Assembly (NCBI RefSeq): GCF_020745735.1
Contig: NC_083409.1
Coordinates: 12,895,259-12,959,258, forward strand
Length of the DNA: 64,000 bases
Direction of reading: 5' to 3'
Origin: Hemiscyllium ocellatum
Lineage: Eukaryota
Below the pieces are notes generated by a model. That model searched no databases. It had not been told where the DNA came from and saw only the letters and a list, made by a program, of their open reading frames with translations. This document shows positions 26,330 to 53,099 of the stretch, piece by piece (positions within the stretch are counted from its first letter, which is position 1; the number at the start of each line of letters is the position of its first letter). A program made the position numbers and the translations under genes.

Positions 26330-27205
26330 CAACAAAGACCTTGACAAACTAATCCCATTTTCCCGCTCTTGGTCCATAGGCCTGGAAGCTACAGCAACAC
26401 AAATGTATATCTAAACACTGCTCCAATGTCACGAGAGTTTGTGACTCAAACAGCCTTTCAGGCAGTGAGTTCCAGACTCCCACCACCCTCTGGGTGAAAA
26501 CATTTCTCCTCAACTCACCTCTCACTCTCTAAGTCGACTGGGCCTGAACTCACTTGAGTTCAGTAGGATAAGAGAGGATCAGATTGAAATGTATAAATTT
26601 CTAACAGGGCTGGGCAGGGAGGAGGTTTCCCCTGGTTGGGAATTCTGGAACCAGGGGACCCAGTCTTGGGGGATACAAAGTTGACCATTTAGGACTGAGA
26701 TGAGGAAACATTTCTTCACTCAGAGGCTAGTCAACCTGTTGAACTCTGTACCTACGATCCTGACAGCTATGGAGGAGAGAGAATTGAATATGTTCAAGAT
26801 TATTGTTCTGCCTTTTCACACCATGAATGGAATGGGGAGAAAGCAGGAATATGGCTTTGAGATGGAGGATCAGCCATGATCATACTGAATGACAGAGCAG
26901 AGTCAAAGGGCTGAGTGGGCTACTCCTGTTTCTGTGTTTCTGTGTTTCTGTTACCCTCAGTTTCTGACCCTAGTTTCTGACACCTTTATCCATGTAAAAA
27001 GTGCCTTCCTGTCGAATTTAAATGTGCCCCTCATAATCTTACAGTCCTCTGTCAGGTTTCCTCTCAACTTTCACTGCTCCAAGGAAAACAACCCCAGTCT
27101 TTCCAATCTTTCCTCATCACTCAGACCCTACAGCCCAGGCAGCATCCTGGGAAATCTCTGCACCCTTCCGAGTACAACCACTTCCTTCCCACAATGTGGT
27201 GACCA
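26330..27205. mobile_element. Three CR1 3' fragments of mixed orientation
   Basis: CR1 3' motifs on minus (26330-26530), plus (26540-26940) and minus (26950-27205). Confidence 0.7.
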
Positions 27206-27209
27206 GATC

Positions 27210-27492
27210 CTGTCTCTCTCTCTCTCTTTATCACTTTCTCTCTTTATCACTCCCATTCTGTCTCACATCTGCCAACTCTTTCTCTCTATCTCTCTCTTTG
27301 GCACTCCTAATCTCTCCCATTCTCTCTCTCTCGCACTCTGTCCCATCATCACTCTCTGCAACTCACTCACACTTTCTCACTCTGTCTCATAATCTCTATT
27401 TCTCCATCTCTCACTGTTTCCCTCACTTCCTCCCTTTCTTGTTTCTTATCTATTCTTTCTTCTTTCTCCATCCTTCCTCTCCACCTATCTGG

Positions 27493-27523
<31 letters not shown>

Positions 27524-27715
27524 CCCCCTTAGTCACACTATCTCACACCCTATTTCTTTCCCCATTTCCCTCAACCTCACCATCTCTACTTCCATCTGCA
27601 TCTCTCTCGCTCCCTGTACACATCTCACACTATCGCAGACACACCTCCCTCTCTCTCACACACACATGCTCTCCCTCCAACTCTCATTCTGTATCTCTTC
27701 CCTCTCTTTCCCACA
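27210..27715. repeat. CT-rich low-complexity tract
   Basis: Imperfect (CT)n. The inverted paralogous GA-rich tract is at 52500-52790. Confidence 0.9.
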
Positions 27716-27782
27716 GTATCCCAAGTGGTGACAGTTAATTGCAGGTCAAATCTCCCTCTGCTCTGGCCCACTAATGGATGTT

Positions 27783-28087
27783 TGACTGGGACAGCACTAC
27801 TATTATAGGACAAGCCAAACAGAGAACAGCCAGGGAATTCCTAGAGGCATGGCACTCATCCACAGATTCAATCAATAAGCACATCGACCTGGACCCAATA
27901 TACCAGCCACTGCAGTGGACAGCTGGAACTGACAACTGGAAGCAGCAGAGACAAATCACTATAAATGCCGGAGGAAAGATCACAGAAGCGCTTCACAGGA
28001 GGCTCCCAAGCACTGAGGGTGTCACTTAGACAGGGGACGAAACGTCTGCAACACAAATTCCCAGGTCGGCGAACAGAACCACAACAG
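27783..28087 (+). mobile_element. 5'-truncated PLE (family 2) insertion with apparent 8-bp target-site duplication
   Basis: FDWDSTTIIGQAKQRTAREFLEAWHSSTDSINKHIDLDPIY. Flanked by TGGATGTT (27775-27782) and TGGATATT (28088-28095). Confidence 0.85.
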
Positions 28088-28499
28088 TGGATATTAACTC
28101 TTAACCTCAGAAGCATGTCTTCTCCTGAAGTAAGGCCCCATTTCCCACATTGACCAGGCATTAGCCTGTCTCAAGATGATGGACAGATTCTTGTTAAACG
28201 AAGACAGTTCTGTGCTGTTGGCCTATTCTCACTGGGGACTGGTTTGGACACTCATTCCATGAAATCCCAGCAGAGAGAGGAGATCCTCAGGCCATCAGTG
28301 TGAGCTGGAGGGACAGGACAGGCTCTGACCCACTGACCCATCCTGTCCATTCACAACATGTTCCAATCCCTTCCCCTCTCCTTCCCCTTCCACAGTCAGG
28401 CTCTGAGTCAAGGTGTTTTACTGGGATGAGGTCAGGGCCATCACACAATTACACCAGAAAGGAACTGAACCCCACACCCACCATGATATCCATGACCCA

Positions 28500-28845
28500 C
28501 TGGGACTCTCCAATGGAGACCAGTAAACATAGGCCTCCTTCCCAATGGATGTCCAGCAGAGACCAGTATATATGGATCTCCATACCATTGGATCATCCAA
28601 TACATATCAGTAAACATGGACCTCCATTACACTGGGCCTTTCAATAGACACCAGTAATCACAGGCCCACAGCCCACTGGATGCTCCAATAGACTCCAGTA
28701 AACATGGGTCACCATCTCACAAGATACTTCAGTTGAGGCCAGTAAACTAGGGCCTTCTTTCCCCTGAACTTTACAATAGAGACCAGTAGGCATGCATCCT
28801 GTTCCCACTGATCCTCCAATAGAGACCAGTCAACATGGGCTTCCA
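28500..28845 (+). repeat. Degenerate minisatellite with a unit of about 40-45 bp
   Basis: Recurrent ccaatagagaccagtaaacatgggcc...cccactg. Inverted paralog at 50490-50575 and 51855-51960. Confidence 0.8.
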
Positions 28846-29429
28846 TGCCACTGCACCCTTCAGTATCTGAGCTTCAAACCGCACATCCTCTCCATCACGT
28901 GGGCCTCTTTTCTATCTCCACAACATTGTCTCTCTGCACTACGTCAGCCCCTTGTTTCTTATCTATTCTTTCTTCTTTCTCCATCCTTCCTGTACACATT
29001 CCTGTTCATTATTCCTGTTCATCCCACCTCCTAACTCCATAATCCTGATGTCCTCTCCCACCTTCCTTCCACCCGCTCCATAAAGCCCAACTGTCTGAAA
29101 TGGAGTGGTCCCTTCCCTGTCTCACACCAAGGAGGAGATGAACAGATATTTAATGAGTAATGGGTTAAAGGATGATGGAGAGTGAGCAGGAAAGTGGAGT
29201 TGAGTCTGAGATGGGATCAGCCATGATTGTATTAAATGGTGGAGTGGGCTTGAGGGGCTGAATTGCCTGCTCCTGCTCCTAGTTCTTATGTTCCTCCACC
29301 CTCTCCCCCATCCCTCTTACTGCAACTTTGTGAACCATCTTGGAATGTTTTGGATATTGAAGGTGCGATGTGAATTCAACATTTGTGTTGAATTAATGTG
29401 GGGACAGAATTGTCCAGAGGCTGTGAAAG

Positions 29430-31400: not shown

Positions 31401-31768
31401 AGATACATGGGAACACTTCCCATGAGTGAATACTTAAAACCAAATGAAGTGTTCCTCAGGAGGGGAGAGGGAATGTTCAAGATCCTGAGCTCCATTTCCC
31501 AGCCCAGGCAGTTTGTCTCCCAATGAATGTATGAGATGCCAATTTGAAGCCCAGCTTCAGAGCAGTATCACTCTGTGGACATGAGGTCCATAAGAGGGAA
31601 TTGGAGATTGAGCTGTAAAGGAAAGATTTGCTGAGTTATGGGGAGAGAGCAATGGGGCTAATTGAGTAATTCCAAGGCATGATGGGCTGAATGGCCGCCT
31701 CCTGTGCTGTCAGATTCCAGGGAGAGCAGATGGTTCACAGTTTTCTCCCATCTCAGTAACAAATACCC

Positions 31769-31922
31769 AGCTGCTCCGAGCTCCTTCTTTCACTTCCTCT
31801 CTTGGTGAAGTTTCAACCTTGCGATCTGACAGTCTTTGCAGTTATTTTTTACACTGGGGCTTTCTGCTGTGGTCAGAATCTCTAATAATTTGTGTCCGAT
31901 CAGTGACAATCACAGCAGCTAA
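31769..31922. promoter_or_regulatory. Conserved duplicated non-coding block (copy A), candidate lymphoid enhancer or promoter
   Basis: 151/154 identical to the reverse complement of 48411-48564. Contains EICE GGAAGTGAAA (minus, 31797-31788) and RUNX TGTGGT (31868-31873). Confidence 0.5.
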
Positions 31923-31929
31923 GAGCAGT

Positions 31930-32620
31930 CAGGACTGAGGAGCCAGGCTCACTGGGAAACACATTAGGAAGATCAAAGCCATCCTCTTCAGCTCCTGGTA
32001 CAAGCTCCATCCCTCTCCCTGAGCACTGTCTGCTGCTCAACCAGGCTCTTTATAACTTTGGCCTCATCTTTGAGGCTGATTTGAGGCCCAAGTCCTCCAC
32101 ATCACAATTATCAGCCACTGAAAATCTCAACCATGTTTTTGAGACTCCAAATGTGACAATTCCAATGTTATCCAGGCCCACGTCACAGCCACTGCCTTCC
32201 GTAAATATCAGCTCATCCCAAACTCTGCTATCGTTGTTCCAACTCACACCAAGTCCACCCCACACCCCCGTCCCTATCTTCCGTCCCACCATGACCACCA
32301 CAATCCTCACTGACCGACATCAGCTCCTGGTCCAGCAACACCTTGATTTTCAAATTCTCATCCTTGTTCTTAAACCGCTCCCTGTCCTTCCATCCTCCCT
32401 ATCTCTGTGACCTCCTCCAAGCCACCTCAGTGTGGTTAGCAATCTTGGATATATGGCTCTCTGTTTCTTCATCCAAGTCATTGAGAAATATCGTGAAAAG
32501 ATGAGATCCCAGCACAGATCCCTGGCAACACCACTACTCACATCTGGCTCATTGGAACACATACACATTATCCTTCCTCTCTGTCTCCTAGACGGACCCA
32601 TTTCTGACACAAGGTAAATA
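31930..32620 (+). mobile_element. L2 RT 3' fragment (arm A of the inverted duplication)
   Basis: L2-like RT C-terminal sequence, homologous to 47730-48400 on the minus strand. Confidence 0.7.
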
Positions 32621-32914
32621 CATTTCTCAAATTCCAACCGATTCCATGATTTGGAGGTGCCAGTGTTGGACTGTCGTGTACAAAGTTAAAAATCACAGAA
32701 CACCAGATTGTAGTCCAACAGGTTTATTTGGAAACACCAGCTTTCTGAGCGGTGCTCCTTCATCAAGTAATTGTGGAGCGCAAGATCTGATTCCATGTTT
32801 CTTTTGTGGAATGTTCTTAAATGTCTTCTGGAATTCCCTATGGTCAATAGCCATCGACATTCCCTTAAATCCCACATTAGGGACCTCCTAACAATGTGTA
32901 ACCTCGTTAGTTAA

Positions 32915-33205
32915 AGATTCGATCAGATTCCCTACAGTGTGGAAACAGACCCTGTGGACCAACAAGTCCACGCTGACCCTCCGAAGAGAAACCCACCCAG
33001 ACCCATTTCCCTCGGAACTAATGCACCTAACACGGTGGGCAATTTAGAATGGCCAATTCACCTGACCTGCACATTTTTACACTGTGGGAGGAAACCCACG
33101 CAGACACAGGGAGAATGTATAAGCTCTACACACATCCGAGGCTGGAATTGAACCTGGGCCCCTGGTGCTGTGAGGCAGCAGTGCTAACCACTGAGCCACT
33201 ATATT
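32915..33205 (-). mobile_element. HE1-like SINE
   Basis: Runs from gatcagattccctacagtgtggaaac to gtgctaaccactgagcc. Confidence 0.85.
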
Positions 33206-34014
33206 GAACCTTCAATGTCTGAACCTTTGTAAATCCATGCTGATTCTCTCAGACCAGTTCATATTTGTCCGTTATTCTGTCTCTAAAACCAGACTCAATC
33301 ACTTCCTGACAACAAACATTCAACGGAGATGTTCATTGTGAATGAGGTTACTAAACCGCTAGCACTGACATGAGTGGCTGAAGAGCCTCCTTCTGAGCTG
33401 GAGCCTTCTCTGTCTCATTGATGGGAATATTTTACAGATTAAAAATTAAAGACTAACAGCAATTTTTTAAAAAACATTAAAAACTCCTCAAATAATTCCC
33501 ACATACAGGGCCGGGCGATGTGTAGTAATTGTACGATGGGGAAGCTGGTGGAGCCCATTGTAGCTCAGAGTGACCACATCTACAGCAAGTGTTGGTTGCT
33601 CAAGGCACTCCAGCTCAGAGTTGATGAGCTGGAATCTGAGCTTCAAACACTGCGACACATAGGGGAGGAGGCGAGTTACCTGGACACTGTGTTTGGGGAG
33701 GCAGTCATACCTTGTAGGTTAAATACTTCAAATTATAGTCAGTGGTTAGGGACAGGAGGGTGTGACGATAAGTGAGCAGGTCGATGCAGCCTGAATGTAG
33801 TATTGCAGGAGTCTCAGCTCATTCTCCAACAGGAATGAGGTACATGCTCCCTGTGTCAGTGAGGGAAATGTTTGTTTGGAGAATGGGCAAACCTAGTGTA
33901 AGCATTTTGGTGATAATGACCATAACTCTGTAAGTTTCAAAGTCATCATGTAAAGAGATAAAGATGAAGCAAAAATTAAACGTGTAAACTGGGGGATATC
34001 CGATTTCAACTAGG

Positions 34015-34390
34015 CAAAAGTGAGGACTGCAGATGCTGGAAACCAGAGTTTAAATCAGAGTGGTATTGGAAAAGCATTGCAGGTCACGCAGCATCTGAGG
34101 GCAAGAAAATTGACATTTTGAGCAAAAGCCCTTCATCAGGAATAGAGGCAGGGACTCTCCAGTGTGGAGAGATAAATGGAGGTGGTGGGTGGGGAGGGGC
34201 GTGTTTAGGGAGAAGGTAGCAAAAAGTACAATAGGTGAATGGGGTGGGGATGGAGGTGATAGGTCAGAGGGGAGGGTGCAGCAGATAGGTGGGAAGGGAG
34301 ATTGGCAGGTAGGACAAGTCATGAGGACAATGCTGATCTGGAAGGTTGGAACTGGGGTAAGGTGGAGGGAGGGAAATGAGCTCTTCAACC
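34015..34390 (-). mobile_element. PLE family-1 terminal region
   Basis: aaagtgaggactgcagatgctgga..., with a hammerhead-like motif at 34112-34139. Confidence 0.75.
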
Positions 34391-34639
34391 ATGTACTGAA
34401 AGAGACGCGACTTCACCAGTTTCCTCATTTCCCCTATGATTGTACGATTCCATGTGGTTGTCTGTTAACTGCCCTATGGGCAGTAAATATTGGCTTGGTC
34501 AGAGATGCCCATATCCTATGAATGAATGAATGAAAACATGCATCATGGTCCAGGAGGCCATTCAGACTGGGGGAGCACAAAGGAAAGAGGAGGATTTGAT
34601 AATGAGGGGGACTGATAGCATCCTTTGTGAGCAGGATTG

Positions 34640-36890
34640 AGAGTCCCACATGGTGTGTTGCCTGCCTGGTGCTCAGGTAAGGGGCATCTCGAACCAGCTT
34701 GAAAGGATATTGGAGTGGGGGCGGGGAGGAGGATCCAGTTGTTGTCGTGTTGAGACCAACAACATTGGCAACATAGGCTAAAGGTCCTATTTGGGCAATA
34801 TCAGGAAAGCTATCAGAAGGATATTGATTAAACGGATGGAGAGAAATAAGAAAGAGATGAATACAGTATCAGTGCTGAGGAACAGATTCCAGTGAATGGA
34901 CCAAATGAGAGTTCTATATATGAATGCACGGAGCGTAAGGAATAAATACAATAATCTGCGGGCACAAATTCAAATTTAAGATTATGCTGTAGGATCAATT
35001 ACTGAGACATATTTGCAGAATAGTTAAGATTGGGAACTAAATATATCGGGTTAGAAGGTTCACAGGATGGGCTTGGGGAAATGACAGAAGAGGTGGAGCA
35101 GCTTTATTCATTAGAAACAAAATTACTTCAATGGTGAGGGAGGTTAAAATGAGGGGAAAGCATTCAGTGGAACTGAGAAGCAGGAAAGGATCTAAAACTG
35201 TAATAGATGTTGGATACAGACCCCCCCTGGCAGCAGCTCTGAGGTGCTGGATTGTATAAATGTAGGAATTAGGCAAGTGTGCAGCAAAGCCAGTGTATTA
35301 TTAATGGGGAAGTTTAATTTTAACTTAGATTAGGAGAGAGACAAGCCCTCTGTCAGAAAGGTAGTGAATTTCTGGAGGGTATCCGGAATAGTTACCAAAA
35401 GCAATAGGTCCTGGATACAACAAGGGGACAAACAATATTGGAATTAGTAATGAATAATGAACCAGATTTAGTTGGTAACTACTTGTACATGAACATTTAT
35501 CAAATAGTGATCATAACATGATCGAGTTCAGTGTCACATTTGAAAGTAAACAGCATGAATCAGCTGCTAGAGTTTGAGATTAAGGTAAGGGCCGACTTTA
35601 ACGAGATGCGACAGAGACTGTCCACAGTAAACTGGGAAAATCTGCTCATGGGTAAAACAACTGAAGAACAGTGGGGGATGTTTAAAGAAACATTCAACAT
35701 AAAACAAAACCAGTTTATACCTGAGACGGGAAAGCTCCACTTCTTCGAACAAACAGCAATGGACAATAAAGGAGATTAGGGAAAGAATAAAACTAAAACA
35801 AGGGCTTACAAAAAAGCAAGTAAAATGACATCATCTGCTGAATGGGAAAGATACAAAGGGCCACAAAGCAGCTTCGAAGAGCTACCAAAAGGGATTCTGA
35901 AAGGAAACACGTAAGGGATATCAAAATCAATAAGGAGAAATGTTTCAGTTCCATAAAAGGGAATCTGGGAGGTCAGGAGCAATGTTGGTATTAAAGACTG
36001 AAAGTGGGGGATATTGTCAGTGACAATGGGGAAATGACAGCCATGTTAAATAAATACTTTACCTCAAGATTTGCAGTAGAAAAGGAGGAGGACTTGCCTG
36101 AAGTCCCAAAAGAATTAACGGGGATTAGGGACAGGGACTGAATAAAATTAATGCCAGAAAAACATCTGTAATGAGGAAAATAATGAAAATGAAGAGTGAC
36201 AATCCCTCAGGATCTGATATTCTCCATCTGAGGGTGATAAAGGTAGCAACAGACCACATTGTAGACACTCTGACTATAATCTTTCAGAGTTCCCTGGATA
36301 CAGGAGTCGTACCTTTGGCTTGGAAATTTGCAAACGTCACTTCACGTTTAACAAGGATTTGAGAGAAAATCCAGGGAATTACAGGTCACTCAGCCAGCGT
36401 TTGTAATGTGGAAATTGTTGAAGTCTATAATCAAGGATGGGGGTAACTGAAGACTTTGAAAATGGTCAGTTATTCAGGGAGAGTCAGCATGGATTCATGA
36501 CAAGGTGGTCATGGTGAAAAACCTCATTGAACTTTTTTGAAGAGGAGACTAACGTATTGGACACAGTAATGTCAATGGATGTTGTTTATTGGGACTTCCA
36601 GAAGACATTTGATAGTGTCCTATGTAAGAAAACGTCAACTTCGATAAATGTCCACAGAATTGAGGCTAAAATACTGGCACATTGGAATGCTGGTTGAGTG
36701 ACAGGTGACCGAAAATAGGGATAATGGGTAAGTGCTGAAATCGGCAGGATGTGACGTGTCCAATAGGAATGTGTGCTCACAACTCAGTTAGTTACATTAT
36801 TTATCAATGACTTGGATAATGGCACAGAAAGTCAGATATTTCAGTTTGCTTATAACACAAAGTTTGGCAGCATTGTAGACAGTGTCGACA
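34640..36890 (+). mobile_element. Decayed CR1 (ORF1 remnant, endonuclease, RT)
   Basis: VCCLPGA, YMNARSVRN, YRPP, KADFNEMRQRLSTVNWENLL and RT motifs, with stops. Confidence 0.8.
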
Positions 36891-37095
36891 GAGTCAGAGA
36901 GTCATACAGCATTCAACCAGGGCAGTCTTTAACAGAGTATAATTTATCTTTGATATACAACTCCTTGAACTCCATCTCTCTCTCTCTCGCTGTATCCTCC
37001 TCCTCCCTCTCTACCTCAGCTGCATGGATCTTACTCTGATTTTAATCCCTCTTTTCTCTCTACAAGCTCCATCTCCCTCTCTCTCAAAGCTCCCA

Positions 37096-43099: not shown

Positions 43100-45600
43100 T
43101 TGTAAAGGGGGAAGGCAGATGATTCTGTGGTCAAAAATGAGACTTCTGAATAGCATGTTGCCTCCGAGGTGCACAGGTCAGGGATGTGTCAGATCAGCTA
43201 CAGGACATTCTGAAAGGGGAGGTGAACAGCGAGCTGTGATGGTGAATGTAGGTACAAATGATATCAGTAATAAATGGGATAAGGTCCTACAAGCAGAATT
43301 TAGGAGGTAGGAACCACGTTAAAAAGTTGAACCTCAGAGGTAGTAATCTCAGGATTGCTACCAGTGCCACGTAGCAGAAATGAAAAAAAAAGGCAGGATG
43401 AATGCGTGACCTGAGAGATGGTGTAGGAGGGAGATGCTCAGATTTTTGGGACATGAGGACCAGTTCTGGGGGAGGTGGGACTATTACAAATCAGATGGTC
43501 TACACCTGGGCAGGACTGGAACTAATGTCCTCTGGGGTACTTTTGCTCATACTCTTGGGGAAGGTTCAAGATAAGGTAGCAGAGGGATGGCAAGATTAGG
43601 GAACCCTGGATGACAGATGAAATTGTGAGACTAGCTAAGAGGACAAAGGATGCGTACATAAGGTCTCGGTGGCTGTAAGCATATAAAGCTTTGGAAGAAT
43701 ATCGCAAAAGTAGAACAGATCTGAAATGAGGAATTAAAGGGGATAAAAGGGGTCATGAAATATCATTAGCAAACAGGGTTAAGGAAAATCCCAAAGCCTT
43801 TTATTTATATAAAAGAAGCAAGTGGGTGACCAGTGAAAGGGTTAGCCCACTCAAGCACAAAGGAGGAAAGTTAGGTGTAGAGTCAGAGAAAATGGGAGAG
43901 TTCTTAATGAGTACTTTGTTTCCGTATTCACCAAGAAGAGGGAAAAGATGGATGTTGAAATTGGGGATAGATCTTTGATTACTTTAGGTCAAGTCGGTTT
44001 AAGGGTGGAGGAAGTGTTGAGTATTCTAAAAGGCATGAAGGTGGACAAGTCCCCAGGTCAGGATGGGATCTATCCCAGGTTACTGAGGGAACCGAGAGAG
44101 GAAATAGCTGGGGCCTTAACAGATATCTTTGTAGCCGCCTTAAACGTGGCAGAGATCCCAGAGGACTAGAGAATTGCTAATGTTGTCCCCTTGTTTAAGA
44201 AGGGCAGCAAGGATAATCCAGGTTATTATCAACCGGTGAGCCTGACATCAGTGGTAGGGAAGATGCTGGAGAAGATACTGAGGGATTGGATCTATTTACA
44301 TTTGGAAGAAAATTGACTTATCAGTGATAGGCAGTATGATTTTGTGCAGGGAATGTCATATCTTACTAACTTAATAGAATTCTTTGAAGAAGTGACAAAG
44401 TTGATTGATGAGGAAAGGGCTTTTTGTGTCATATACATGGACTTCAGTAAGGTGTTTCACAAAGTTCCCCATGATAGCCTGATGGAGAAATTAAAGTCAC
44501 ATAGGGTCCAGAGTGTACTCGCCAGATGGATAGAGAATAGGCTGAACAACAGGAGGCTGACAGTGGTAGAGGAAGGGAGTTTCTCAAAATTGAAAACTGT
44601 GACCTGTGGTGTTCCACAGGGATCCATGTTGTTTGCGATATACATAAATGATCTGGAGGAAGGTATAGGTGGTCTGGTTGGCAAGTTTGCAGATGACACT
44701 AAGATTGGTGGAGTAGCAGATAGTGAAGGGGACTGTCAGACAATGCAGCAGAATATAGATAGATTGGCGATTTGGACAGAGAATGGGACAGATGGAGTTC
44801 AATCTGGACAAATGCGAGCTGATGAATTTTGGAAGATCCAATTCTAGAGTGAACTATACAGTGAATGGAAAGTCCTGGAGAAAATAGATGCACAGAGAGA
44901 TCTTGGTGTTCAGGTTCATTGTAACCTGAAGGTGGCAACACAGGTCGATAGAGTGGTCAAGAAGGTATGTGGCCTGCTTTCCTTCATCGGGTGGACAACT
45001 GAGTACAAAAGTTGGCAGGTCATGTTAGAATTGTATCGGACTTTGGTTTGGCCACATTTGGAATACTGCCCACAGTTCTGGTCGTCATATTACCAGAAGG
45101 ATGTGGATGCTTTGGAGAGGGTGCAGAGGAGGTTCACCAGGATTGCCTGGTATGGAGGGCACTAGCTATGGAGAAAGGTTGTGTAGATCAGGATTATTTT
45201 CATGAGAAAGTTAAAGTTTGAGGGGAGACCTGCTTGAGATGTACAAAATCATGAGAGGGAGAGACAGAGTGGATAGCACAAAGCTTTTTCCCAGAGTGGG
45301 GGACTCAATTACTCAGGCTCATGAGGAAGGTTAGAGAGAAAAGTTTAAGGGAGAAATGCATGGAAAGTTCTTTACACAGAGTGTTGTTGGTACCTGGAAC
45401 GTATTGCCAGCCAAGGTGATAGAGGCAGGCATGATCACACCATTAAAGATGTATCTAGACAGACACATGAATGGGCAGGGAGTAAAGGGATAAAGATCCT
45501 TGGAAAATTGATGACCAGTTTAGGTAGATGTTCTGGATTGGCGCAGACGTGGAGGCCCGAAGGGTCTGAGTCTGTGCTGTAATTTGTTTTGTTCTTTGAA
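43100..45600 (+). mobile_element. Internally deleted CR1 (ORF1 esterase remnant plus RT)
   Basis: VMVNVGTNDI, DKSPGQDGIYPRLLRE, YMDFSKVFHKVPHD, KFADDTKIGG. Confidence 0.9.
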
Positions 45601-45609
45601 CTGACGAAG

Positions 45610-46890
45610 CTCAGTGGCACAGAGTGATCTTGGGGTACTTGCCCACTGATCTCTGAATGTGGCAAGACAGGTTAACAGAGCAGTTATGAAGGCACTTGCA
45701 TTTGTCATTCAGGTAATTGCTATAAAAGCAGGAGGATATGTTGCAGTTAAGCAGAACATTGGTTAGGCCACAGCTGGAGTACTGTGTGCAGTTCAGGTCG
45801 CCACACTGTAGGAAGGATGTGATTGCACTGGATGGGGTGCAGAGGGGAATCACCAGGATGTTGTGTGGGATGGAACCTCTTAGTGATGAAGAGAAATTGG
45901 AACAGCTCGGTTTGTTTTCTTCAGAGCAGAGAAGGTGGAGGGGGGACCTGATCGAGGTGTATAAGGTTATGAGGGGAATGGACAGGGAGGAGAGAAAGCA
46001 GCTGTTCTCCTTTGTCGAGGGGGGTGGGTGGGTGGAGGCTCAATAACAAGTTGGTTCACATTCAGTGTGAAAGGTAACAGGTTTCAAGATGTTTTGAGGA
46101 AATTGTTTTTCACCCAGAGGATGATGTGGTTCTGGAATGCACACCGTGGGAAGGTAGTTGAAGTGGGAAACCTCATAAACCTTAAAAAGTACTTGGGTGA
46201 GTAGTTGAAATGTCATAACATTCAAGCAATGGGCCTTGTGTTGGAAAATGAGACTGGTGTAGGTTTAGTGTAAATTGGCTGGTACACAGTTAATGGGCCA
46301 AAGGGCCTCCTCTGTACGGTGTGATTTTATGATTCTATTGTGTGCAGTTTTGGGCTCAGTATCTGAGAAATGATGTTCTGGCTGTGGAGGGAGGGAAATG
46401 AAGGTTTACCAGACTGATCCCTGGGACGACAGCACTTATATCTGTTGAGAAACTGGATCAGTTAGGACTATATTCACTGGAGGTTAGAAGATTGAGAGGA
46501 ACCGCACTGAAACCTTTAAAATCCGAACAGGACAAGACCGGAAAAACACAGGAAGGATGTTCCTAATGACTGGAGAATCCAGAACCAGGAATTAGTTTAA
46601 AGAAAAGGGAAAGGCCATTTTGGACTGAGATGAGGAGACATTTCTTTAGCCAGAGAGTGGGAAGTTGGTGGAATATTCTGTCACAGAAAGCAGTTGAGCC
46701 CAAACCATTAAATGTTTTCAAGAAGATGATAGGTACAGTTCTTGGGACTGAAGGGATTAAGAGTTATGGGGGAAAATGGGAACGGGGGCTAAGTTGAATA
46801 ATCAACCCTGGTCATGTTGAATGGTGGAACTGACTCAAAGGACTGAATGGCCTCCTCCTGCTCTTAGTTCCTTTGCTTCTATGTTTGAGA
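45610..46890 (+). mobile_element. Two tandem CR1 3' fragments
   Basis: LVRPQLEYCVQFRSPHCRKD and CR1 3' UTR motifs, each present twice. Confidence 0.8.
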
Positions 46891-46919
46891 GACTGTTCAT
46901 AAACATGGAAACAATGGAA

Positions 46920-47730
46920 TTATAGAGTCACAGAGTCATCGAGTCCTACAGCACAAAGACAGGTCCTTTGGCCCAAACTGGACCGTGCTGACCAAAATGT
47001 CCATCCACACTAACCCCATTTCCCTGCACTTGGTCCATATCCTTCAAATGTTTTCCTATCTATGTATTTGTCAAAATGCTTTTTAAATGTTGTTAATGTA
47101 CCCCCCTCAATCATTTCCACTGCAGCTCATTCCATTTGCGGATGACCCTCTGTACAAATGCTGTCCCTCAGGTTCTCTTTTATTCTAACCTTAAACTGAT
47201 GCCCTCTACTCCTTGATTCCCCAACTCTGGGAAAAAGACTGAATGCATTCACTCTATCCATGTCTCACATGATCTTTTCTACTTCTAAAAGATCCCCCTC
47301 AGTCTCCTCCGCTCTAAGAAATGAATCCTACTTTGTCCAACCTCTCCCTGTCACTCAGATCATTGAGTCCAGGCAACCTCCTTGTACATTTCCTCTGTAC
47401 TCTTTGCGATTTAATAATATCCTTCCTTTAACAAAGTGAACAAAACTGAACACAATACTCCAAGTGAGACCTCACCAACGTCCTGTACAATTTAATATAA
47501 CTTCCCAAATTCTATACCCAGTACCCTGACTGATGAAGGCCATGACACCGCTTCTTGTAGTGTCATCTGCAAACTTACTAATCATGCTTTGCAGATTCTC
47601 ATCCAAATTATTGATAGAGATAACAAACAGTAATGGGTCCAGCACTGAACCCTGAGGCACTCCACAAGTCACTGGCCCCCAGTCAGACTAGCATCCTTCC
47701 ACTATGATCCTCTGCTTCCTACCATTAAGC
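46920..47730 (-). mobile_element. CR1 3' fragment
   Basis: CGVPQGSVLDPLLFVISINNLD...KFADD on the minus strand. Confidence 0.8.
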
Positions 47731-48410
47731 CAAAGAGAGAAAAAATATCTGTCTTTGGTGAGGAATTCATTTGGGTGTAGGCGGCTTTTGGATGTAGGGG
47801 ACAGAGAAGAGGGATAATGTGTGTGCTCTCCAATAATGTGAATATTGGTGTCCCCAGGGATCTGCGCTGGGACCTCAGCATTTCATGATATTTCTCAATG
47901 ACATGGATGAAGGAATAGCGAGCCATTAATCCAAGATTGCAGACCACACTGAGCAACACAGTTTGGAGGAGGTTACAGAGATAGGGAGAGTGAAGGACAG
48001 GGATGGATTTGAAAACAAGCATGAGAATTTGATGACCGAAGTGTTGCTGGTCCAGGAGCCAATGTAGACATGGTGTGCAGGGGATTGGGGGAACAGACGT
48101 TGGTGCAAGTCTGGACATGGGCAGCAGACTTTGGGAAGAGTGAGTGCAGTGGCTGTGATGTGTGCAAGCACAACATTAGAATGCCCATGTTTGGAGTCAC
48201 AACAGGATGGCTGAGATTTTCAGTGGCTGATCTTTGTGATGTGGAAGATGTGGGACTCAGATCAGCAGGAAAGATGAGGCCCAGGTTGAAAAGAGTCTGG
48301 TTGAGCAGCAGACAGTGCTCAGGGAGAGGGATGGAGTTTGTACCGGGAGCTGAAGAGGATGGCTGTGACCTTCCCAATGTGTTTCCCAGTGAGCCTGACT
48401 CCTCAGTCCT

Positions 48411-48564
48411 TTAGCTGCTGTGATTGTCACTGATCGGACACTTATTATTAGAGATTCTGACCACAGCAGAAAGCCCCAGTGTAAAAAATAACTGCAAAGA
48501 CTGTCAGATCGCAAGGTTGAAACTTCACCAAAAGAGGAAGTGAAAGAAGGAGCTCGGAGCAGCT
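48411..48564. promoter_or_regulatory. Conserved duplicated non-coding block (copy B)
   Basis: AAAGAGGAAGTGAAAG EICE (GGAAGTGAAA 48536-48545), RUNX ACCACA (48460-48465) and MEF2-consensus TTATTATTAG (48442-48451). Confidence 0.5.
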
Positions 48565-48639
48565 CACAAACACACACACCTGCACTCGGAGATCAGAAAC
48601 AAAATCCAGCAGCAGCTCTGTCTCCAAGCTGTGAAACCT

Positions 48640-49250
48640 GCACAGAATTGTTCCCTCATTCAGTTTTTAACTGGCGGGATAGACCAAGCAGGGGAGGCAA
48701 CACAGTGGTGTGTACAGTCGGAAGGGAGTTGCCCTGGGAGTCCTCACCATTAACTATGGAACCCATGAAGCCTCATGACAGCAGGTCAAACATGGAGAAG
48801 GAAACCTCCTGCTGATTACCACATAGCACCGCCCATCCCTCCAGCCTCAACTGAGCAGTCAGTCCTCCTCCATGTTGAACAACACTTGGAGGTAGCACTG
48901 AGGGTGGGAAGGATGCAGGATATACTCTGAGTAAAGCACTTCAAAGTCCACCATCAAGAGCTTCTCAGAAGCATCACTACTGAGCAAGCTGGTCAAGTTC
49001 CACCTGATTCAGCTGCTAGACTGGACCTGGGGCAGGTGGTGAGGGAACCAACAAGAGGGAAAAACATACTCACTATCACCCTCACCAATCTGCCTGCTGC
49101 TGGTGTAGCTGTCCATGACAATATCAGTCAGAGTGACCACTGCACAGTCCGTGTGGAGACAAAATCCTGTCTTCACATTGAGAATACCTTGCATTTTGTT
49201 GGGCAAGAGATATGGGATATCAGGAAGGACTTTGTTTTTAGCAGCAATTG
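48640..49250 (+). mobile_element. L2 endonuclease fragment
   Basis: VREPTRGKNILTITLTNLP...ISQSDHCTVRVET. Same orientation as, and diverged from, the L2 at 29.8-30.4 kb. Confidence 0.75.
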
Positions 49251-50574
49251 GCAACGACTTCAAAATTAGTGCCCATTCAGGTGAGGCAAGTGAAGACACT
49301 CAGGGATTGCAATGGCAGATTGGATGGGCTCTTGATGGAAATAAACCTGCAAGGCCCTGGGGGTCGAGTAGGGGAGGGGGTGGGACTGACTGGATTGCTC
49401 CATGAAATGACAGCATTTACCTGACAGGCTGAATGTTCTCCCCCTGTGCTGGAAATAGGTCTCACTCAATGAGGGGTTCACAAATAGAGAGTTTGGATGC
49501 AGTAAATACAGGAAAAAATGTTTCTCCAGGCAGGAGGGTCAGTAACCAGAGGGCACACATTTCAGAAAGGGTCTGAAGAACAAGAGCGAAGATAGGAACA
49601 TTTTTTATCCAGCGAGTTCATGATGACTGTCTGCAAGGTGAGTGGAAGTGGATTCAACAGCAACTTTCAAAAGGGCATTTGGAGAAATAGCTGAAAAGGA
49701 AACCATTACAAGGTTATACAGGAAGGGCTGGGGAAATGGGACTCATTGAACTAATTTGACTAACAGTCACAATAGGCCCAGTGACCTCTGTCTGTGCTGT
49801 ATAAGAGCTTACACACACTTAGTCTCACCTTTACACAAAACCTGGGAGAAACAGACAACCCAGTTTACAGACAAGTGTTTTCTCAAGCAAAACGCTCTTG
49901 AACAAACTCAGAAAACAGGCCAGACTAGATTTACTGGACTATATCAGCAAATCAATGGCAAGTGAACAGTGAACCAAAAGTAATGGCACTCAACAGTATA
50001 TTCAATAGCACAACAATTGAGAGGGGAGGGATGAAGGGCAGGGGGTCAGAGAGCTCTAGGGGTCTGAAGGCTCTGCTGTCAATGGTGGGATGGAGGAAGC
50101 AGCAATGCGCAGGAGACCAGCGAGAGAAGATGGAAGGGGGAGGGAGAGAATGTGAGTCTGCAGCAGGGCACAGAGTGATGGAGGAGGGAGGCCATGGAGG
50201 CAATTGGCTGGCAGTGAGGTCAGGGTTCATTCTGGAACAACACATGGAAAGACAGGGAAGAGACCACGCCATATCAGACAAGCTGGCGTTTATGGAATTT
50301 GGCATCAGGAAGCTGGGAAAGGACATTGGAATCATATAGTTAGAAGGCAGGACAAACAGGAATTAGGGTTTCTGTGGTCAAGGGGCTGAGGTAGTGCAGA
50401 GATGGAAAATGCCGTTAAGACTGAAATAAGAGACCTACGTGATGGAGAGGATGTAGGGTTTGCAGCTCACGTATTGGACAGTCCCGAGGGAAAGAGGCCC
50501 ATGTTTACTGGTCTCTTCTGAAGCATCCAGTGGGAAGGAGGTCCATGTTTACTGGTCCTATGGGAAGATGGACC

Positions 50575-51810
50575 ATCATCATAGAGTTATGGAGGTTTAC
50601 AGCATGGCATCAGGCCCTTCAGCTCTACTCATCCATGCCGACCAAGTTTCCAAAACTGAACCAGTCCCATTTGCCTGTGTTTGGCCCAAATCTCTCCGAA
50701 TCCTTCCTATCCATGTTCCTGTAAAAATGTCCCGGAAATGTAGTAATTGTACTCACCTTTACCACTTCCTCTGGCAGTCATTGCACATACACGCCATCCT
50801 CTGTGTGAAAAGGTTGCCACTCAGGGCCCTTCTAACTCTTTCCCCTCTCAACTTAAATCTATTCCTTCTAGTATTGGACTCTCCTACTCTGGGGAAAAGA
50901 CGTTGAATATTCATCTTATCAATGACCCTCATGATTCTATAAACCTCTATCTGGTCACCCCTCAATCTTCTGCATTCCCTGGAAGAACATCTCGGCCTAT
51001 CCATCCTCGCCTTATAATTCAAACCCTCCAATCTTGGTAACATCCCTGTTAATCTTTATTTTATCCAAACCAGTGTAATAACTTCCTTCCTATAGCAGGG
51101 TGAGCAGAAATGTGCACAGTGTCCAAATGTGGCCAAATCAATGTCTTATACAGCTGTCACATGATGTCCCAGCTCCTGTACTCCCTGCTTTGACCAGTGA
51201 AGGTGAGCGTGTCAAATACCTTCTTCACCACCCTGTCTACCTGTGACATCACTATCAAGGAACTATGTACCTGTACCCCTCAGTCTCTCTGTTCAACAAC
51301 ACTCCCCATGGCTCTACCATGAATTGTGTAATTCCTGCCCTGGTTTGTCTTACCAAAAGGTAACTCCTTCCATTTATCGAAATTAAACTCCATCTGGATT
51401 TGTTGACCCACTGGCCCAGTTGATCAAGATGACATTGCACTCTTGGATAACCTTCTTCCCTGTCGACGATGCCAACAATTTTAATGTCAGCCACAAACTT
51501 ACTGACCATTCCTGCTATTTTCTCATCCACATTGTTCATATAAATGAAGACCAACAGTGGATCCAGGATCATTTCTTGTGGCAGACGGCTGGTCACTAGC
51601 CTCCAGTCTGAAGAACAACTGTCTCTCACCAGCCTCGGCCTCCTACCATCAGGCCAATTTTATATCCAATTGGCTCGCTCTCCCTTGATCCTATGTGATA
51701 TAATCTTACTGAGCATGGTGGGGGGAACCTTGTCTAAGGCCTTGCTAAAGTTCATGTAGAGAGAGTGTACTGCTCTACCTTTATCTACCTTCTTGATTAA
51801 TTCTTCAAAA
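50575..51810 (-). mobile_element. CR1 RT 3' half inserted into the minisatellite of arm B
   Basis: SRLPQEMILDPLLVFIYMNNVD...KFVAD. Minisatellite units lie on both sides. Confidence 0.85.
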
Positions 51811-53099
51811 ACTCAGCCATCCACTCATCTCTGTTGGAAAGTCCAGTTCTTCGGAGCCCCATGTTTACTGGTCTCAATTAGCAAGTTCAGTGGGAAGGAG
51901 GCCCATGTTTTCTGGTCTCAATTGGGAGGTTCAGTGGGAAGGAGGTCCATGTCTCTCCATTGGGCAGCCCCGTGAACTGAATTCAATGTTTGTTGGTCTC
52001 TGTTGGAGTGTCCATTATATCATGGACACCATGGTTGGTGTGGGGCCAGTTCCCTTCTGTTGTAACTGTGATGCTCTGAACATCATCCCAGTGAAACACG
52101 TTGACTCAGAGACTGATCATGGAATGGGAAGGAGAGGGGAAGGATTTGGAACATGTTGTGAATGGACAGGATGGGTCACTGGGTCACAACCTGTCCTGCC
52201 CCATCCCTCCAGCTCACACTGATGGCCTGAGGATCTCCTCTCTCTGCTGTGCCTTCATGGAATGAGGTTTGTGTCCAAATCAGTCCCCAGTGAGAATAGG
52301 CCAACAGCACAGAACTGCCCTTCATTTGACAAGAATCTGTCCATCTTCCTGAGAGATGCTAAACCTTGGCCACTGTGGGAAATGGGGCCTTACTCCAGGA
52401 AAAAAAAAATGCTTCTGGGGTCAAAGGTTAACATCCATTATCGGGGCAGAGCAGAAGGAGATTTATTCTGCATTCAACTGTCATCACCTGGGACACTGTG
52501 AGAAAGGGAGAGAAGCGAGACAGAGAGAGAGAGAGAGTTAGAGGGAGTGTGTGTGTGTAATCGAGGAATAGAGGGAGGAGCATCTGAGACAGATGTGAGA
52601 TATGGCAGGGGACTGAGAGAGATAGAGGGAGGTAGAAATGGTGTGGTTGATGGAGAGAAAGAGAGAGAGAGAGAGAATATGAAAGAGAATATGAAAGAGA
52701 TGAAAAGTGGGAGAGAGACAGAGAGGTAGAGAGAAAGAAGTGGCAAATGTGAGTCAAAAAGGAAGATAGAGAGAGAGGTGGACAGGTCGTGGTCACCACG
52801 TTCTGGGAAGGATTTGATTGTACTTAAGAGTGTGCAGAGATTTACCAGGATGCTGCCTGCAATAGAGAGTTAGTTATGAGGAAAGATTGGAAAGGTTGAG
52901 GTTGTTTTGCGTGGAGCAGTGAAGGTTGAGAAAGAACCTCATTGAGGGGTATAAGATTATTCAAGGCTGTGATATGGTGGGTAGGAAATAAAAGCATCAA
53001 TAAAACAGTTATTAATGTGATTCTCAGAGATGTGTCATTATTCTAGTCACAAACAACTATTTCCCAGTGAAGGGGTCCATCCTGCTGAATATTAGATAC

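What the first reader, a model, noticed from the sequence alone, without database searches (positions are those of the whole stretch)
27050..52970. About 26-kb degenerate palindrome upstream of V: inverted arms enclosing a tail-to-tail gene-end pair
Seen: 27050-29130 matches 52970-50250 and 31769-32620 matches 48564-47730 in reverse complement. They share CR1, CT-tract, unique block, minisatellite and L2 junctions, so this is segmental duplication rather than independent insertions. Near the centre, 37151-37470(+) and 39861-39470(-) form a further inverted pair. I found no second V, J or C in the window. Inference: either (a) an inverted duplicate of a non-Ig gene lying head-to-head with the kappa V, or (b) the upstream region of a second, divergently oriented kappa cluster whose V is lost or lies beyond 64000.
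Basis: partly seen in the sequence, partly recalled or inferred. Interest (0 to 1): 0.7.

Follow-up and report, generated by a model that had tools for sequence, protein, structure and literature searches.

The report
Orphan mirror-image flank of shark kappa gene
The "palindrome" is two old, oppositely oriented copies of the standard upstream flank of shark antibody kappa light-chain gene clusters. The left copy still leads into a working-looking V-J-C gene; the right copy has no gene within the window, yet keeps its enhancer-like core almost unchanged.

Summary
The inverted matches are real and close to the stated coordinates. They are segmental copies, not chance and not independent insertions.

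- **What the arms are.** Each arm is the stereotyped 5' flank of a shark kappa (NS4/type III-like) V-J-C cluster. The same blocks, in the same order, lie upstream of V in 5 of 5 Chiloscyllium punctatum kappa loci that I fetched. The enhancer-like B module is present in both loci that have enough gap-free upstream DNA.
- **Left arm.** It runs into an intact-looking split cluster on the minus strand.
- **Right arm.** It stops at 52986, about 0.86 kb short of where a leader exon should start, exactly where a dispersed LINE-like repeat begins. No V, J or C follows up to 64000.
- **Age.** The arms are about 83% identical, no closer to each other than to bamboo-shark flanks. The duplication is therefore ancient and not an assembly artefact.
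- **Centre pair.** The central "gene-end pair" belongs to a three-copy dispersed repeat on a different axis. It is not a gene end and not the palindrome's centre.
Reading (a), a non-Ig gene, is rejected. Reading (b) is supported, but whether the partner V is lost or lies beyond the window stays open.
- **Orphan core.** The orphan arm's 154-bp core (Ets-IRF plus RUNX sites) has 1 lineage-specific change where about 14 are expected.

The scan has already noted head-to-head kappa pairs and this upstream module elsewhere in this genome.

The parts
14138..14485 (-). C-kappa exon of the left (intact-looking) cluster
   Evidence: Pfam C1-set, E 8.5e-22. It is 95.7% identical to the C exon of C. punctatum locus L004.
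25058..25131 (-). J segment (25058-25092) with its 23-bp-spacer RSS (heptamer 25093-25099, nonamer 25123-25131)
   Evidence: Read directly from the sequence: GGTTTTTGT, 23 bp, CACTGTG, then FGPGTKL and a GTAAGT splice donor.
25498..26056 (-). Leader exon (26008-26056), V-kappa exon (25526-25822) and 12-bp-spacer RSS (25498-25525)
   Evidence: Pfam V-set, E 2.3e-17. The sequence was read directly. The closest proteins are nurse-shark NS4-type (91%), Hemiscyllium (89%) and Chiloscyllium (88%) kappa chains.
27033..27780 (-). Left arm, block A-outer: an old LINE-3'-like fragment plus a CT-rich tract
   Evidence: Inverted match to 52960-52430 at 72-73%. Collinear matches lie upstream of V in L001, L003, L004 and L005.
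27781..28093 (.). SINE-like insertion private to the left arm
   Evidence: Absent from the right arm and from L001 and L003-L005. It has a copy at 999-1285. Summed word depth is about 840,000 against about 54 for single-copy contigs.
28094..29122 (-). Left arm: block A-unique (28094-28470), degenerate 44-bp minisatellite (about 28490-28860) and A-inner (to 29122)
   Evidence: Inverted matches to 52431-51862 (79%; core 85-91%) and to 50561-50250 (75-76%). A-unique is 84-89% identical to L001, L003, L004 and L005 (73% to L002) upstream of V. 10-13 diverged paralogous contigs lie on it in the species' own reads.
31436..32634 (-). Left arm: pre-B (31436-31768), B core with Ets-IRF and RUNX sites (31769-32068), and B-rest (32069-32634). 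B starts 5.7 kb upstream of the leader ATG.
   Evidence: Inverted match to 48564-47795. The first 154 bp are 151/154 identical between the arms. TTTCACTTCC lies at 31788 and TGTGGT at 31868. L001 3264-3549 matches at 95%, and L002 matches at 4844-5510. Contigs of two other organisms span 31436-32140 at about 88-90%.
32635..46039 (.). TE-rich spacer between the arms
   Evidence: RVT_1 ORFs at 41000-41374 and 44317-44844. Integrase_H2C2 at 38003-38305. At least 54% matches repeats elsewhere in the window or in the loci. No block here matches the kappa flanks of L001-L005.
37195..37453 (+).
   Evidence: 95.6% to 39693-39580; 89% to 52987-53114.
38367..39693 (-).
   Evidence: 90% over 1226 bp to 54266-53046. 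Weak scattered matches lie at non-syntenic places in L001 and L002.
46040..48564 (+). Right arm, inner part: block C (46040-46926), LINE fragment (46922-47732), B-rest (47787-48264) and B core (48265-48564)
   Evidence: Block C matches L001 1656-2472 and L002 3595-4134, just upstream of B in both. B is the inverted match of the left B. TTTCACTTCC (rc) lies at 48545 and TGTGGT (rc) at 48465, with the same 80-bp spacing as on the left. Only 1 lineage-specific change falls in the 154-bp core.
48582..50561 (+). Right arm: block D, a unique stretch, and A-inner with part of the minisatellite
   Evidence: 48612-51358 matches L004 8327-11069 at 87.4% over 2.8 kb without a break. D also lies beside the second, inverted B of L002 (L002 893-29, 72%).
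50579..51815 (-). LINE inside the right arm's minisatellite; absent from the left arm
   Evidence: 69% to the RVT_1-bearing LINE at 40997-42239. Collinear copies lie in L004 and L002.
51853..52986 (+). Right arm, outer part: minisatellite (51853-51964), A-unique (52045-52431), A-outer (52432-52986). This is where the arm ends.
   Evidence: TRF finds a 44-bp unit. Inverted match to the left arm. Homology to L003 ends at L003 1299, 861 bp before that locus's called V-gene start (2160), and to L004 at 13372.
52987..54266 (+). Copy Y' of the dispersed LINE-like repeat, abutting the truncated end of the right arm
   Evidence: 90% to 39581-38367. Alignment. No V, J or C lies to its right up to 64000.

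Best explanation
**What it is.** The window holds one complete, split (non-joined) shark kappa light-chain cluster on the minus strand: leader, V with a 12-RSS, J with a 23-RSS, and C.

Upstream of V lies the cluster family's standard 5' flank:
- A blocks within about 3 kb.
- An enhancer-like B module 5.7 kb from the ATG. It carries a perfect Ets-IRF composite site and a RUNX site.

About 13 kb further on lies a second copy of that flank in the opposite orientation: C, B, D, LINE, minisatellite, A. It points to the right, as if it led into a plus-strand partner cluster.

**What it is not.** The structure is not a device. It is the footprint of the head-to-head arrangement in which this gene family was amplified.

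**Age.** The two flanks are old paralogues, about 83% identical. They are no closer to each other than to flanks in another shark species.

**The missing partner.** The right flank is cut off at 52986, about 0.86 kb before the expected leader exon, at the edge of a LINE-like repeat. Its V-J-C is absent from the window. I infer that it was most likely lost (about 60%) rather than pushed beyond 64000 (about 30%).

**The orphan core.** The orphan flank's 154-bp B core has stayed under purifying selection. This is shown only as a rate contrast. Whether the core still regulates anything is inference.
For: **Shown: the arms are real.**
- The inverted blocks are collinear with E-values down to 0.
- Each arm has private TE insertions.

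**Shown: the cluster anatomy.**

**Shown: the blocks are kappa flank.**
- A-unique, A-outer, promoter and V lie in that order upstream of V in 5 of 5 C. punctatum kappa loci.
- B lies 6.4 kb (L001) and 4.5 kb (L002) upstream of V.
- Block C lies upstream of B in both.
- L002 has a second, inverted B plus D only 3.3 kb from the first. That is a head-to-head module pair in another species.
- Right arm 48612-51358 is 87.4% identical over 2.8 kb to the flank of L004, which runs on into a complete V-J-C.

**Shown: copy number fits a gene-family flank.**
- 10-13 diverged contigs lie on A-unique and pre-B in the species' own reads.
- Summed depth is about 840-2650 against about 54 for single-copy contigs.
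- This fits the roughly 50 NS4 genes estimated in nurse shark (PMC2193156).

**Shown: the arms are old.**
- Pairwise identity on 516 shared columns is 83% between the arms and 82-84% to L001 and L003-L005.
- On 1033 columns the right arm groups with L003 and L004 (99/99), and a clade of the two arms is rejected (p-AU 0.0016).
- The LINE and D insertions are shared by the right arm and bamboo-shark loci but are absent from the left arm.

**Shown: the partner is missing.** No V, J or C lies right of 52986.

**Shown: the orphan core is conserved.** It has 1 lineage-specific change in 154 bp against 35 in 394 bp of B-rest (binomial P 1e-5).
Against: - I could not read beyond 64000, so loss of the partner V-J-C is inferred, not shown.
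- Notes of the scan place an Ig C exon 29 kb beyond the window's end and a '3' boundary' 39 kb beyond it (unchecked). A plus-strand cluster therefore exists to the right and could be the partner.
- With strict columns the tree is a star, and a clade of the two arms is not rejected (p-AU 0.065). 'Older than the species split' rests partly on gappy columns and on shared insertions.
- L004 shows no B within about 10 kb upstream of its V, though it has an 884-bp gap there. The module is therefore not proven universal.
- Only five loci of one other species were sampled, chosen by which assembly files were readable.
- The summed depths are, as the tool says, not copy numbers.
Confidence: 0.8

Rival explanations
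1. The partner cluster is intact but was pushed more than 11 kb away by nested transposon insertions. It lies beyond 64000, so the structure is an ordinary complete head-to-head kappa pair seen through a window edge.
For: - 52987-64000 is TE-rich: at least 56% matches repeats, and it holds LINE RT ORFs.
- The right arm ends exactly at the edge of a LINE-like copy.
- The scan's notes place an Ig C exon 29 kb and a cluster '3' boundary' 39 kb beyond the window's end (unchecked).
- The intact state of the right B core would then need no special explanation.
Against: - After the LINE-like copy and the next element's 3' end (about 56,906), no flank, promoter or V homology resumes within 7 kb.
- The last 616 bp of the window match the far-upstream end of bamboo-shark locus L001 at 92% in plus orientation. 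This hints that the next cluster brings its own complete flank, which would leave the right arm orphaned.
Confidence: 0.3
2. The right flank was originally in tandem (same orientation as the left). It was flipped by recombination between the two inverted 90%-identical repeat copies Y (38367-39693, minus) and Y' (52987-54266, plus), which bracket it exactly.
For: Y and Y' are inverted, 90% identical over 1.2 kb, and flank 39694-52986, which contains the whole right arm. This is the classic substrate for inversion by non-allelic recombination.
Against: - Undoing the inversion would put the expected V just left of Y, and no V remnant is there.
- A head-to-head B pair exists independently in C. 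punctatum L002.
- The scan's notes report many head-to-head pairs in this genome (unchecked).
Confidence: 0.08
3. The shared blocks are pieces of one dispersed composite transposon, present at many unrelated loci. Two copies happen to lie inverted here.
For: - The blocks are multi-copy in the species' reads.
- They contain old TE fragments: a LINE-3'-like piece in A-outer and a SINE-like stretch in B-rest.
Against: - In all five bamboo-shark loci, which were fetched through kappa V or C proteins and not through the blocks, the blocks sit in the same order and orientation directly upstream of V.
- Copy number is tens, like the gene family. True TEs in the same stretch reach depths 100 to 10,000 times higher.
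- There are no terminal repeats and no coding capacity.
Confidence: 0.03
4. One reading: the arms are an inverted duplicate of a non-Ig gene lying head-to-head with the kappa V, with terminal exons near the centre.
For: - Long ORFs of 167 and 145 aa are kept in the same frame in both B copies.
- A short ORF end is shared by copies X and Y.
Against: - The ORFs have no Pfam family.
- Differences are even over codon positions (12/15/16), with 22 non-synonymous against 10 synonymous codons.
- No reads from a poly-A single-cell RNA run of a close relative lie on A-unique or B.
- X and Y belong to a dispersed repeat with a third copy outside the mirror position.
Confidence: 0.02
5. Assembly artefact: a false fold-back duplication.
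For: Nothing beyond the general risk in repeat-rich regions.
Against: - The arms are only about 72-91% identical.
- They differ by a SINE, a LINE, block D and block C.
- Each has closer structural relatives in another species.
- Artefactual fold-backs give near-identical arms.
- Independent contigs match the left arm with 1-8 differences (records 3 and 4).
Confidence: 0.02

Closest known systems
Multiple V-J-C light-chain clusters of cartilaginous fish (nurse-shark NS4 / horned-shark type III, kappa-like)
   Same: - The left part of the window is such a cluster: leader, V with a 12-RSS, J about 400 bp away with a 23-RSS, and a single C1-set exon.
- The V is 91% identical in protein to a nurse-shark NS4-type chain.
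- The family has about 50 members in nurse shark (PMC2193156). This matches the tens of copies of the flank blocks.
   Different: - The published clones cover 2-3 kb around V-J. In the papers I could search, neither the 5-7 kb upstream flank nor the relative orientation of neighbouring clusters is described.
- The J-C intron here is 10.6 kb, swollen by LINEs.
Head-to-head kappa cluster pairs noted elsewhere in this genome by this scan (e.g. s1-223295, s1-216823, s1-207263)
   Same: Two kappa-cluster flanks face away from each other around a TE-filled middle. The arms are old and decayed.
   Different: Only one side still has its V-J-C in view here. The right flank is cut about 0.86 kb before the expected leader. 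I did not check those other windows myself.
Oppositely oriented IgL clusters of teleosts (zebrafish, catfish; PMC3014032)
   Same: Light-chain genes are organised as many small clusters, some in opposite orientation, which allows inversional events.
   Different: - In teleosts it is V segments within or between clusters that are inverted and used for rearrangement.
- Here the evidence is only for duplicated 5' flanks, with no sign of inter-cluster rearrangement.
Mammalian light-chain enhancers with PU.1/IRF4 composite elements (kappa 3' enhancer, lambda enhancers). From my own knowledge of the literature, not checked here.
   Same: A perfect GGAAGTGAAA composite site lies beside a RUNX site in a sharply conserved non-coding island next to a light-chain gene.
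   Different: - It lies upstream of V, not downstream of C.
- There is one per small cluster.
- No binding or activity data exist. Resemblance of motif content is not membership.
Large palindromes maintained by arm-to-arm gene conversion (e.g. sex-chromosome palindromes)
   Same: Inverted arms around a spacer.
   Different: - The arms are about 83% identical, not above 99.9%.
- They are no closer to each other than to paralogues in another species, so there is no sign of ongoing homogenisation.
- The 98% core is equally conserved in a bamboo-shark paralogue (96-97%). That points to selection rather than conversion.

Membership tests
5' flank of a cartilaginous-fish kappa (NS4/type III-like) V-J-C cluster | Lies directly upstream of a kappa V with leader, RSS, J and C in cluster arrangement | tested here: met
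   Left arm: V-set and C1-set exons, 12- and 23-RSS. The flank is contiguous with the promoter, as shown by the unbroken alignment of 24826-26891 to L003. Right arm: not met within the window.
5' flank of a cartilaginous-fish kappa (NS4/type III-like) V-J-C cluster | The same blocks recur, in the same order and orientation, upstream of other kappa V genes | tested here: met
   A-unique and V in 5 of 5 C. punctatum loci, with A-outer detected between them in 4 of them (not L002). B in 2 of 2 loci with more than 6.5 kb of gap-free upstream DNA. Block C upstream of B in both.
5' flank of a cartilaginous-fish kappa (NS4/type III-like) V-J-C cluster | Copy number comparable with the gene family (tens), not with transposons | tested here: inconclusive
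   10-13 diverged contigs; summed depth about 16-49 times the single-copy contig depth, against 100 to 10,000 times more for neighbouring SINEs. The tool warns that summed depth is not a copy number.
Local inverted segmental duplication (palindrome formed in one event) | Collinear inverted arms that share junctions between unrelated components | tested here: met
   Six collinear inverted blocks on one axis. The junctions LINE-fragment / CT tract / unique / minisatellite are shared.
Local inverted segmental duplication (palindrome formed in one event) | The two arms are each other's closest relatives | tested here: not met
   83% between the arms against 82-84% to bamboo-shark flanks. A clade of the arms is rejected on 1033 columns (p-AU 0.0016) but only nearly so on 516 strict columns (p 0.065). 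The right arm shares the LINE and D insertions with L004 and L002, not with the left arm.
Dispersed composite transposon | Terminal repeats or coding capacity, and presence at unrelated loci | tested here: not met
   No Pfam domain in the block ORFs and no terminal repeats bounding the arms. All five outside copies lie upstream of kappa V.
   Differences at codon positions 12/15/16; 22 non-synonymous against 10 synonymous codons. No Pfam hit.
Lymphoid light-chain enhancer with an Ets-IRF composite element | GGAANNGAAA composite site with partner sites, conserved well above its surroundings | tested here: met
   GGAAGTGAAA and TGTGGT lie 80 bp apart in both arms. The core is 151/154 identical between the arms and 148-149/154 to L001, while B-rest is about 82%.
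Lymphoid light-chain enhancer with an Ets-IRF composite element | Binds PU.1/IRF-type factors and drives B-cell-specific transcription | not testable with these tools
   No chromatin or reporter data. The poly-A scRNA run of a relative shows no reads on the module, which is neither for nor against.
Known structured RNA | Match to an Rfam covariance model | tested here: not met
   No match at gathering score anywhere in the window.

The most novel reading that the evidence does not exclude
The right-hand module is a true orphan, its own V-J-C being gone, yet it is still under selection. It has 1 change in 154 bp where about 14 are expected. By contrast, the partner module in bamboo-shark locus L002 has decayed to 78% and lost its Ets-IRF site. 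This would mean that these per-cluster enhancer-like modules can act at 15-22 kb on neighbouring clusters. The paired modules in the middle of head-to-head clusters would then form a shared, bidirectional control region rather than two private switches.
Probability: 0.25. Interest if true: 0.6.

Novelty: new member of a known kind. Interest (0 to 1): 0.35.

Why it matters
- **Amplification unit.** The result shows that the unit amplified in the shark kappa family is not just V-J-C. It also includes about 7 kb of ordered upstream flank, with a sharply conserved enhancer-like island.
- **Orientation and age.** Such units sit head-to-head. The flanks are older than the split between two orectolobiform-like sharks.
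- **A natural experiment.** The orphan flank carries a candidate Ig enhancer that has lost its own gene but not its sequence. If the partner gene is really gone, this locus is a good place to ask whether shark Ig miniloci are regulated autonomously or share control elements.
- **Otherwise ordinary.** Apart from that, the structure is an ordinary evolutionary footprint, and the scan has already seen similar pairs in this genome.

Tried and rejected
- **Rfam over the whole window.** Nothing found.
- **Pfam on 30 ORFs.** Only V-set, C1-set, RVT_1 and Integrase_H2C2 hit. The ORFs in blocks A and B and in the X/Y repeat have no family.
- **Protein Atlas on the Y' ORF.** Only a weak lead to an endonuclease family (score 0.87). 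I do not rely on it, so 'LINE-like' for X, Y and Y' rests on its dispersed copies and on my reading of the ORF, not on a test.
- **RNA evidence.** The 'RNA?' runs look like genomic DNA in their repeat profile. The one true RNA run (poly-A single-cell, a related species, 2% read) has no reads on the conserved blocks. Transcription is therefore neither shown nor excluded.
- **The search of earlier findings by sequence.** Blank.
- **Fetching DNA for other shark kappa loci.** Hemiscyllium and Scyliorhinus loci failed because the files are too large. The comparison rests on one other species.
- **A second kappa gene on the L002 scaffold.** I looked for one to see L002's partner V. None is annotated.
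- **Literature.** I found no paper describing the orientation or upstream flanks of shark kappa clusters.
- **Gene conversion as the cause of the 98% core.** Rejected as the main cause, because a bamboo-shark paralogue is 96-97% identical over the same 154 bp.
- **Continuation of the arms inward.** The pair 33215-33395 / 42423-42243 (83%) has no counterpart in the bamboo-shark flanks. It is left unexplained.

Full report

| Left | Right | Identity |
|---|---|---|
| 27033-27351 | 52960-52648 | 73% |
| 27473-27782 | 52737-52430 | 72% |
| 28088-28660 | 52437-51862 | 79%, E 7e-136 |
| 28776-28954 | 50561-50379 | 76% |
| 29011-29122 | 50363-50250 | 75% |
| 31769-32590 | 48564-47795 | 79%, E 0 |

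The blocks keep one order and one axis; coordinate sums are 79,300-80,500.

Alignments show what interrupts them:
- A 313-bp element at 27781-28093 is present only in the left arm. It has a copy at 999-1285. In the species' own reads its summed word depth is about 840,000, against about 54 for single-copy contigs.
- A LINE at 50579-51815 is present only in the right arm. It is inserted into a 44-bp minisatellite.

The arms share junctions between unrelated components: an old LINE-3'-like fragment, a CT tract, a unique block and a minisatellite. They are therefore related by segmental descent. The window has no N.

**2. The gene next to it.**

On the minus strand lies a complete, split kappa-type cluster:
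- leader 26008-26056
- V exon 25526-25822, followed by CACAGTG, 12 bp, CCAAAAACC
- a J at 25058-25092, preceded by GGTTTTTGT, 23 bp, CACTGTG
- a C exon at 14138-14485

The V is closest to a nurse-shark NS4-type chain (91%) and to Hemiscyllium and Chiloscyllium kappa chains (88-89%). There is no second V or C in the window by tblastn. No inverted counterpart of 13500-27033 lies anywhere right of 52900.

**3. The centre pair is something else.**

- 37195-37453 (plus) and 39693-39512 (minus) do match: 95.6% over 114 bp and 87% over 69 bp.
- The minus-strand copy runs on to 38367. It has a third, plus-strand copy at 52987-54266, 90% identical over 1226 bp. The axis of that pair is near 46,300, not 40,000.
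- The family has weak, scattered matches at unrelated places in bamboo-shark loci.
- Between the two central copies lie fragments of a retrovirus-like element (Integrase_H2C2 at 38003-38305).

This is a dispersed repeat in a transposon graveyard. It is not a pair of gene ends and not the centre of the palindrome.

**4. What the arms are: a test with another species.**

I fetched five Chiloscyllium punctatum loci through their kappa V or C proteins, not through the blocks. I then compared them with the window.
- In 5 of 5 loci, A-unique lies upstream of the promoter, leader and V in the same orientation, with A-outer between them in four (L002 gave no A-outer hit). A-unique is 84-89% identical in four of them and 72-73% in L002.
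- The B module lies 6.4 kb upstream of V in L001 (core 95%) and 4.5 kb upstream in L002. In the window it starts 5.7 kb from the ATG.
- A further block, C (46040-46926), is present only in the right arm. It lies just upstream of B in both L001 and L002.
- L002 also has a second B in inverted orientation 3.3 kb from the first. Beside it lies block D, which in the window sits next to the right-arm B (48582-49462). This is a head-to-head module pair in another species.
- Right arm 48612-51358 (D, a unique stretch and the start of the LINE) matches L004 8327-11069 at 87.4% over 2.8 kb without a break. In L004 that flank runs on into a complete V-J-C.

In the species' own reads, 10-13 diverged contigs lie on A-unique and pre-B. 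Contigs of two other organisms span 31436-32140 at about 88-90%. Tens of copies fit the roughly 50 NS4 genes estimated in nurse shark (PMC2193156). The depth sums are only a rough guide.

The blocks do recur, and they recur beside kappa clusters, not at unrelated loci.

**5. Where the right arm ends.**

- Its homology to L003 stops at L003 1299, 861 bp before that locus's called V-gene start (2160). Its homology to L004 stops at 13372.
- In the window this is 52986, and the LINE-like copy starts at 52987.
- The left arm continues through this point into its promoter; 24826-26891 aligns to L003 without a break. The boundary of the palindrome is therefore a truncation of the right arm.
- Nothing to the right, up to 64000, matches the promoter, V, J, C or introns of the left cluster or of L001-L005. 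At least 56% of that stretch is recognisable repeat.
- The last 616 bp of the window match the far-upstream end of L001 at 92% in plus orientation.
- Notes of the scan place an Ig C exon 29 kb beyond the window and a cluster boundary 39 kb beyond it (unchecked).

I infer that the next cluster to the right probably brings its own flank, and that the right arm is an orphan. This is not shown.

**6. Age.**

- On 516 columns present in all seven flanks, the arms are 83% identical to each other and 82-84% to L001, L003, L004 and L005. The tree is a star, and a clade of the two arms is not quite rejected (p-AU 0.065).
- On 1033 columns the right arm groups with L003 and L004 (99/99), and the clade is rejected (p-AU 0.0016). 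Those extra columns include gappy, CT-rich sequence.
- Independent structural markers point the same way. The LINE in the minisatellite and block D are shared by the right arm and bamboo-shark loci but are absent from the left arm.

The arms are old paralogues of two sub-lineages of the family, at least as old as the split of the two species. This excludes an assembly fold-back and a recent local duplication. There is also no sign of arm-to-arm homogenisation.

**7. The conserved island.**

- Within B, the first 154 bp are 151/154 identical between the arms and 148-149/154 identical to L001. B-rest is about 82% in all three comparisons.
- Both arms keep GGAAGTGAAA and TGTGGT 80 bp apart.
- Counting changes private to each of the three lineages, the right (orphan) arm has 1 in the core, 5 in 137 in the shoulder and 35 in 394 in the rest. 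About 13.7 were expected in the core (P 1e-5).
- The long ORF across B is not coding: differences fall 12/15/16 on the codon positions, and there is no Pfam hit.
- Other agents of this scan have described this module upstream of other kappa clusters. Here I confirm it for this window and for two bamboo-shark loci.
- I add that an apparently gene-less copy is as well kept as a gene-linked one. The inverted partner module in L002, by contrast, has decayed (120/154, Ets-IRF site broken).

**8. How it most likely came about and works.**

- Shown: there are two anciently diverged copies of the kappa 5' flank, head-to-head, with one cut off.
- Inferred: the family was amplified in units that include the flank. 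Units were placed, or copied, in divergent pairs with the enhancer-like modules in the middle. Transposons then inflated the middle from a few kb (as in L002) to 13 kb. The right-hand V-J-C was later lost or separated at a break now occupied by a LINE-like copy.
- Still open: whether the orphan module still serves a neighbouring cluster. Either the loss is recent, or the module acts at a distance.

**9. Novelty.**

Multi-cluster light-chain genes in sharks are textbook knowledge. Inverted segmental duplications are common. The scan has already noted head-to-head kappa pairs and this module in this genome. I found no paper on the orientation or flanks of shark kappa clusters. The finding is a further, slightly unusual member of a known kind. 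Its one interesting feature is the intact orphan module.

Noticed in passing
window 63383-63998: Matches the far-upstream end of bamboo-shark kappa locus L001 (1-614) at 92% in plus orientation. This is far above the 65-80% seen between other TE copies. It may be the start of the complete 5' flank of a plus-strand cluster just beyond the window. The stretch has a retrovirus-like RT-type ORF (63415-63705) with no Pfam hit.
   Followed up: partly
window 38367-39693 (minus) and 52987-54266 (plus): Two inverted, 90%-identical repeat copies bracket exactly the segment 39694-52986 that holds the whole right arm. They are a ready substrate for inversion by non-allelic recombination, so orientation polymorphism is conceivable.
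   Followed up: partly
window 28094-28470 and 52045-52431: A second conserved island, A-unique, lies about 2.1-2.4 kb upstream of V. It is 84-90% identical between both arms and four of five bamboo-shark loci, while its neighbours are 70-78%. It is a possible promoter-distal control element.
   Followed up: partly
window 58960-59199 and 60383-60622: An inverted repeat 98% identical over 240 bp, with arms 1.2 kb apart. Both arms resemble a LINE 3' end (20879-21265, 72%). It is a young local inverted duplication or hairpin-like insertion.
   Followed up: no
window 31196-31330: A self-complementary element (81% over 144 bp) of extremely high copy number (summed depth about 390,000). Many contigs of four runs break at it. 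It is probably a MITE- or SINE-like foldback.
   Followed up: no
window 33215-33395 and 42243-42423: An inverted pair, 83% identical over 181 bp, on yet another axis (sum 75,638). It has no further copy in the window and no match in the five bamboo-shark loci. Unexplained.
   Followed up: partly
L002 982-1559 and 4844-5510 (C. punctatum BEZZ01000502): A head-to-head pair of B modules only 3.3 kb apart, with an inverted pair of SINE copies between them. The partner module has lost the Ets-IRF site (120/154 in the core). No partner V is annotated on that scaffold.
   Followed up: partly
window 14486-25057: The J-C intron is 10.6 kb, far larger than in the classic 2-3 kb shark clones. It is filled with LINE copies. 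The insertion around 21473-23402 is shared at 83-85% with bamboo-shark loci L003 and L004, so it is old.
   Followed up: partly
L004 11074-11197 (C. punctatum BEZZ01001156): A 124-bp piece of A-unique lies in inverted orientation about 1.1 kb upstream of the full A-unique copy. This is a small local rearrangement inside that flank.
   Followed up: no
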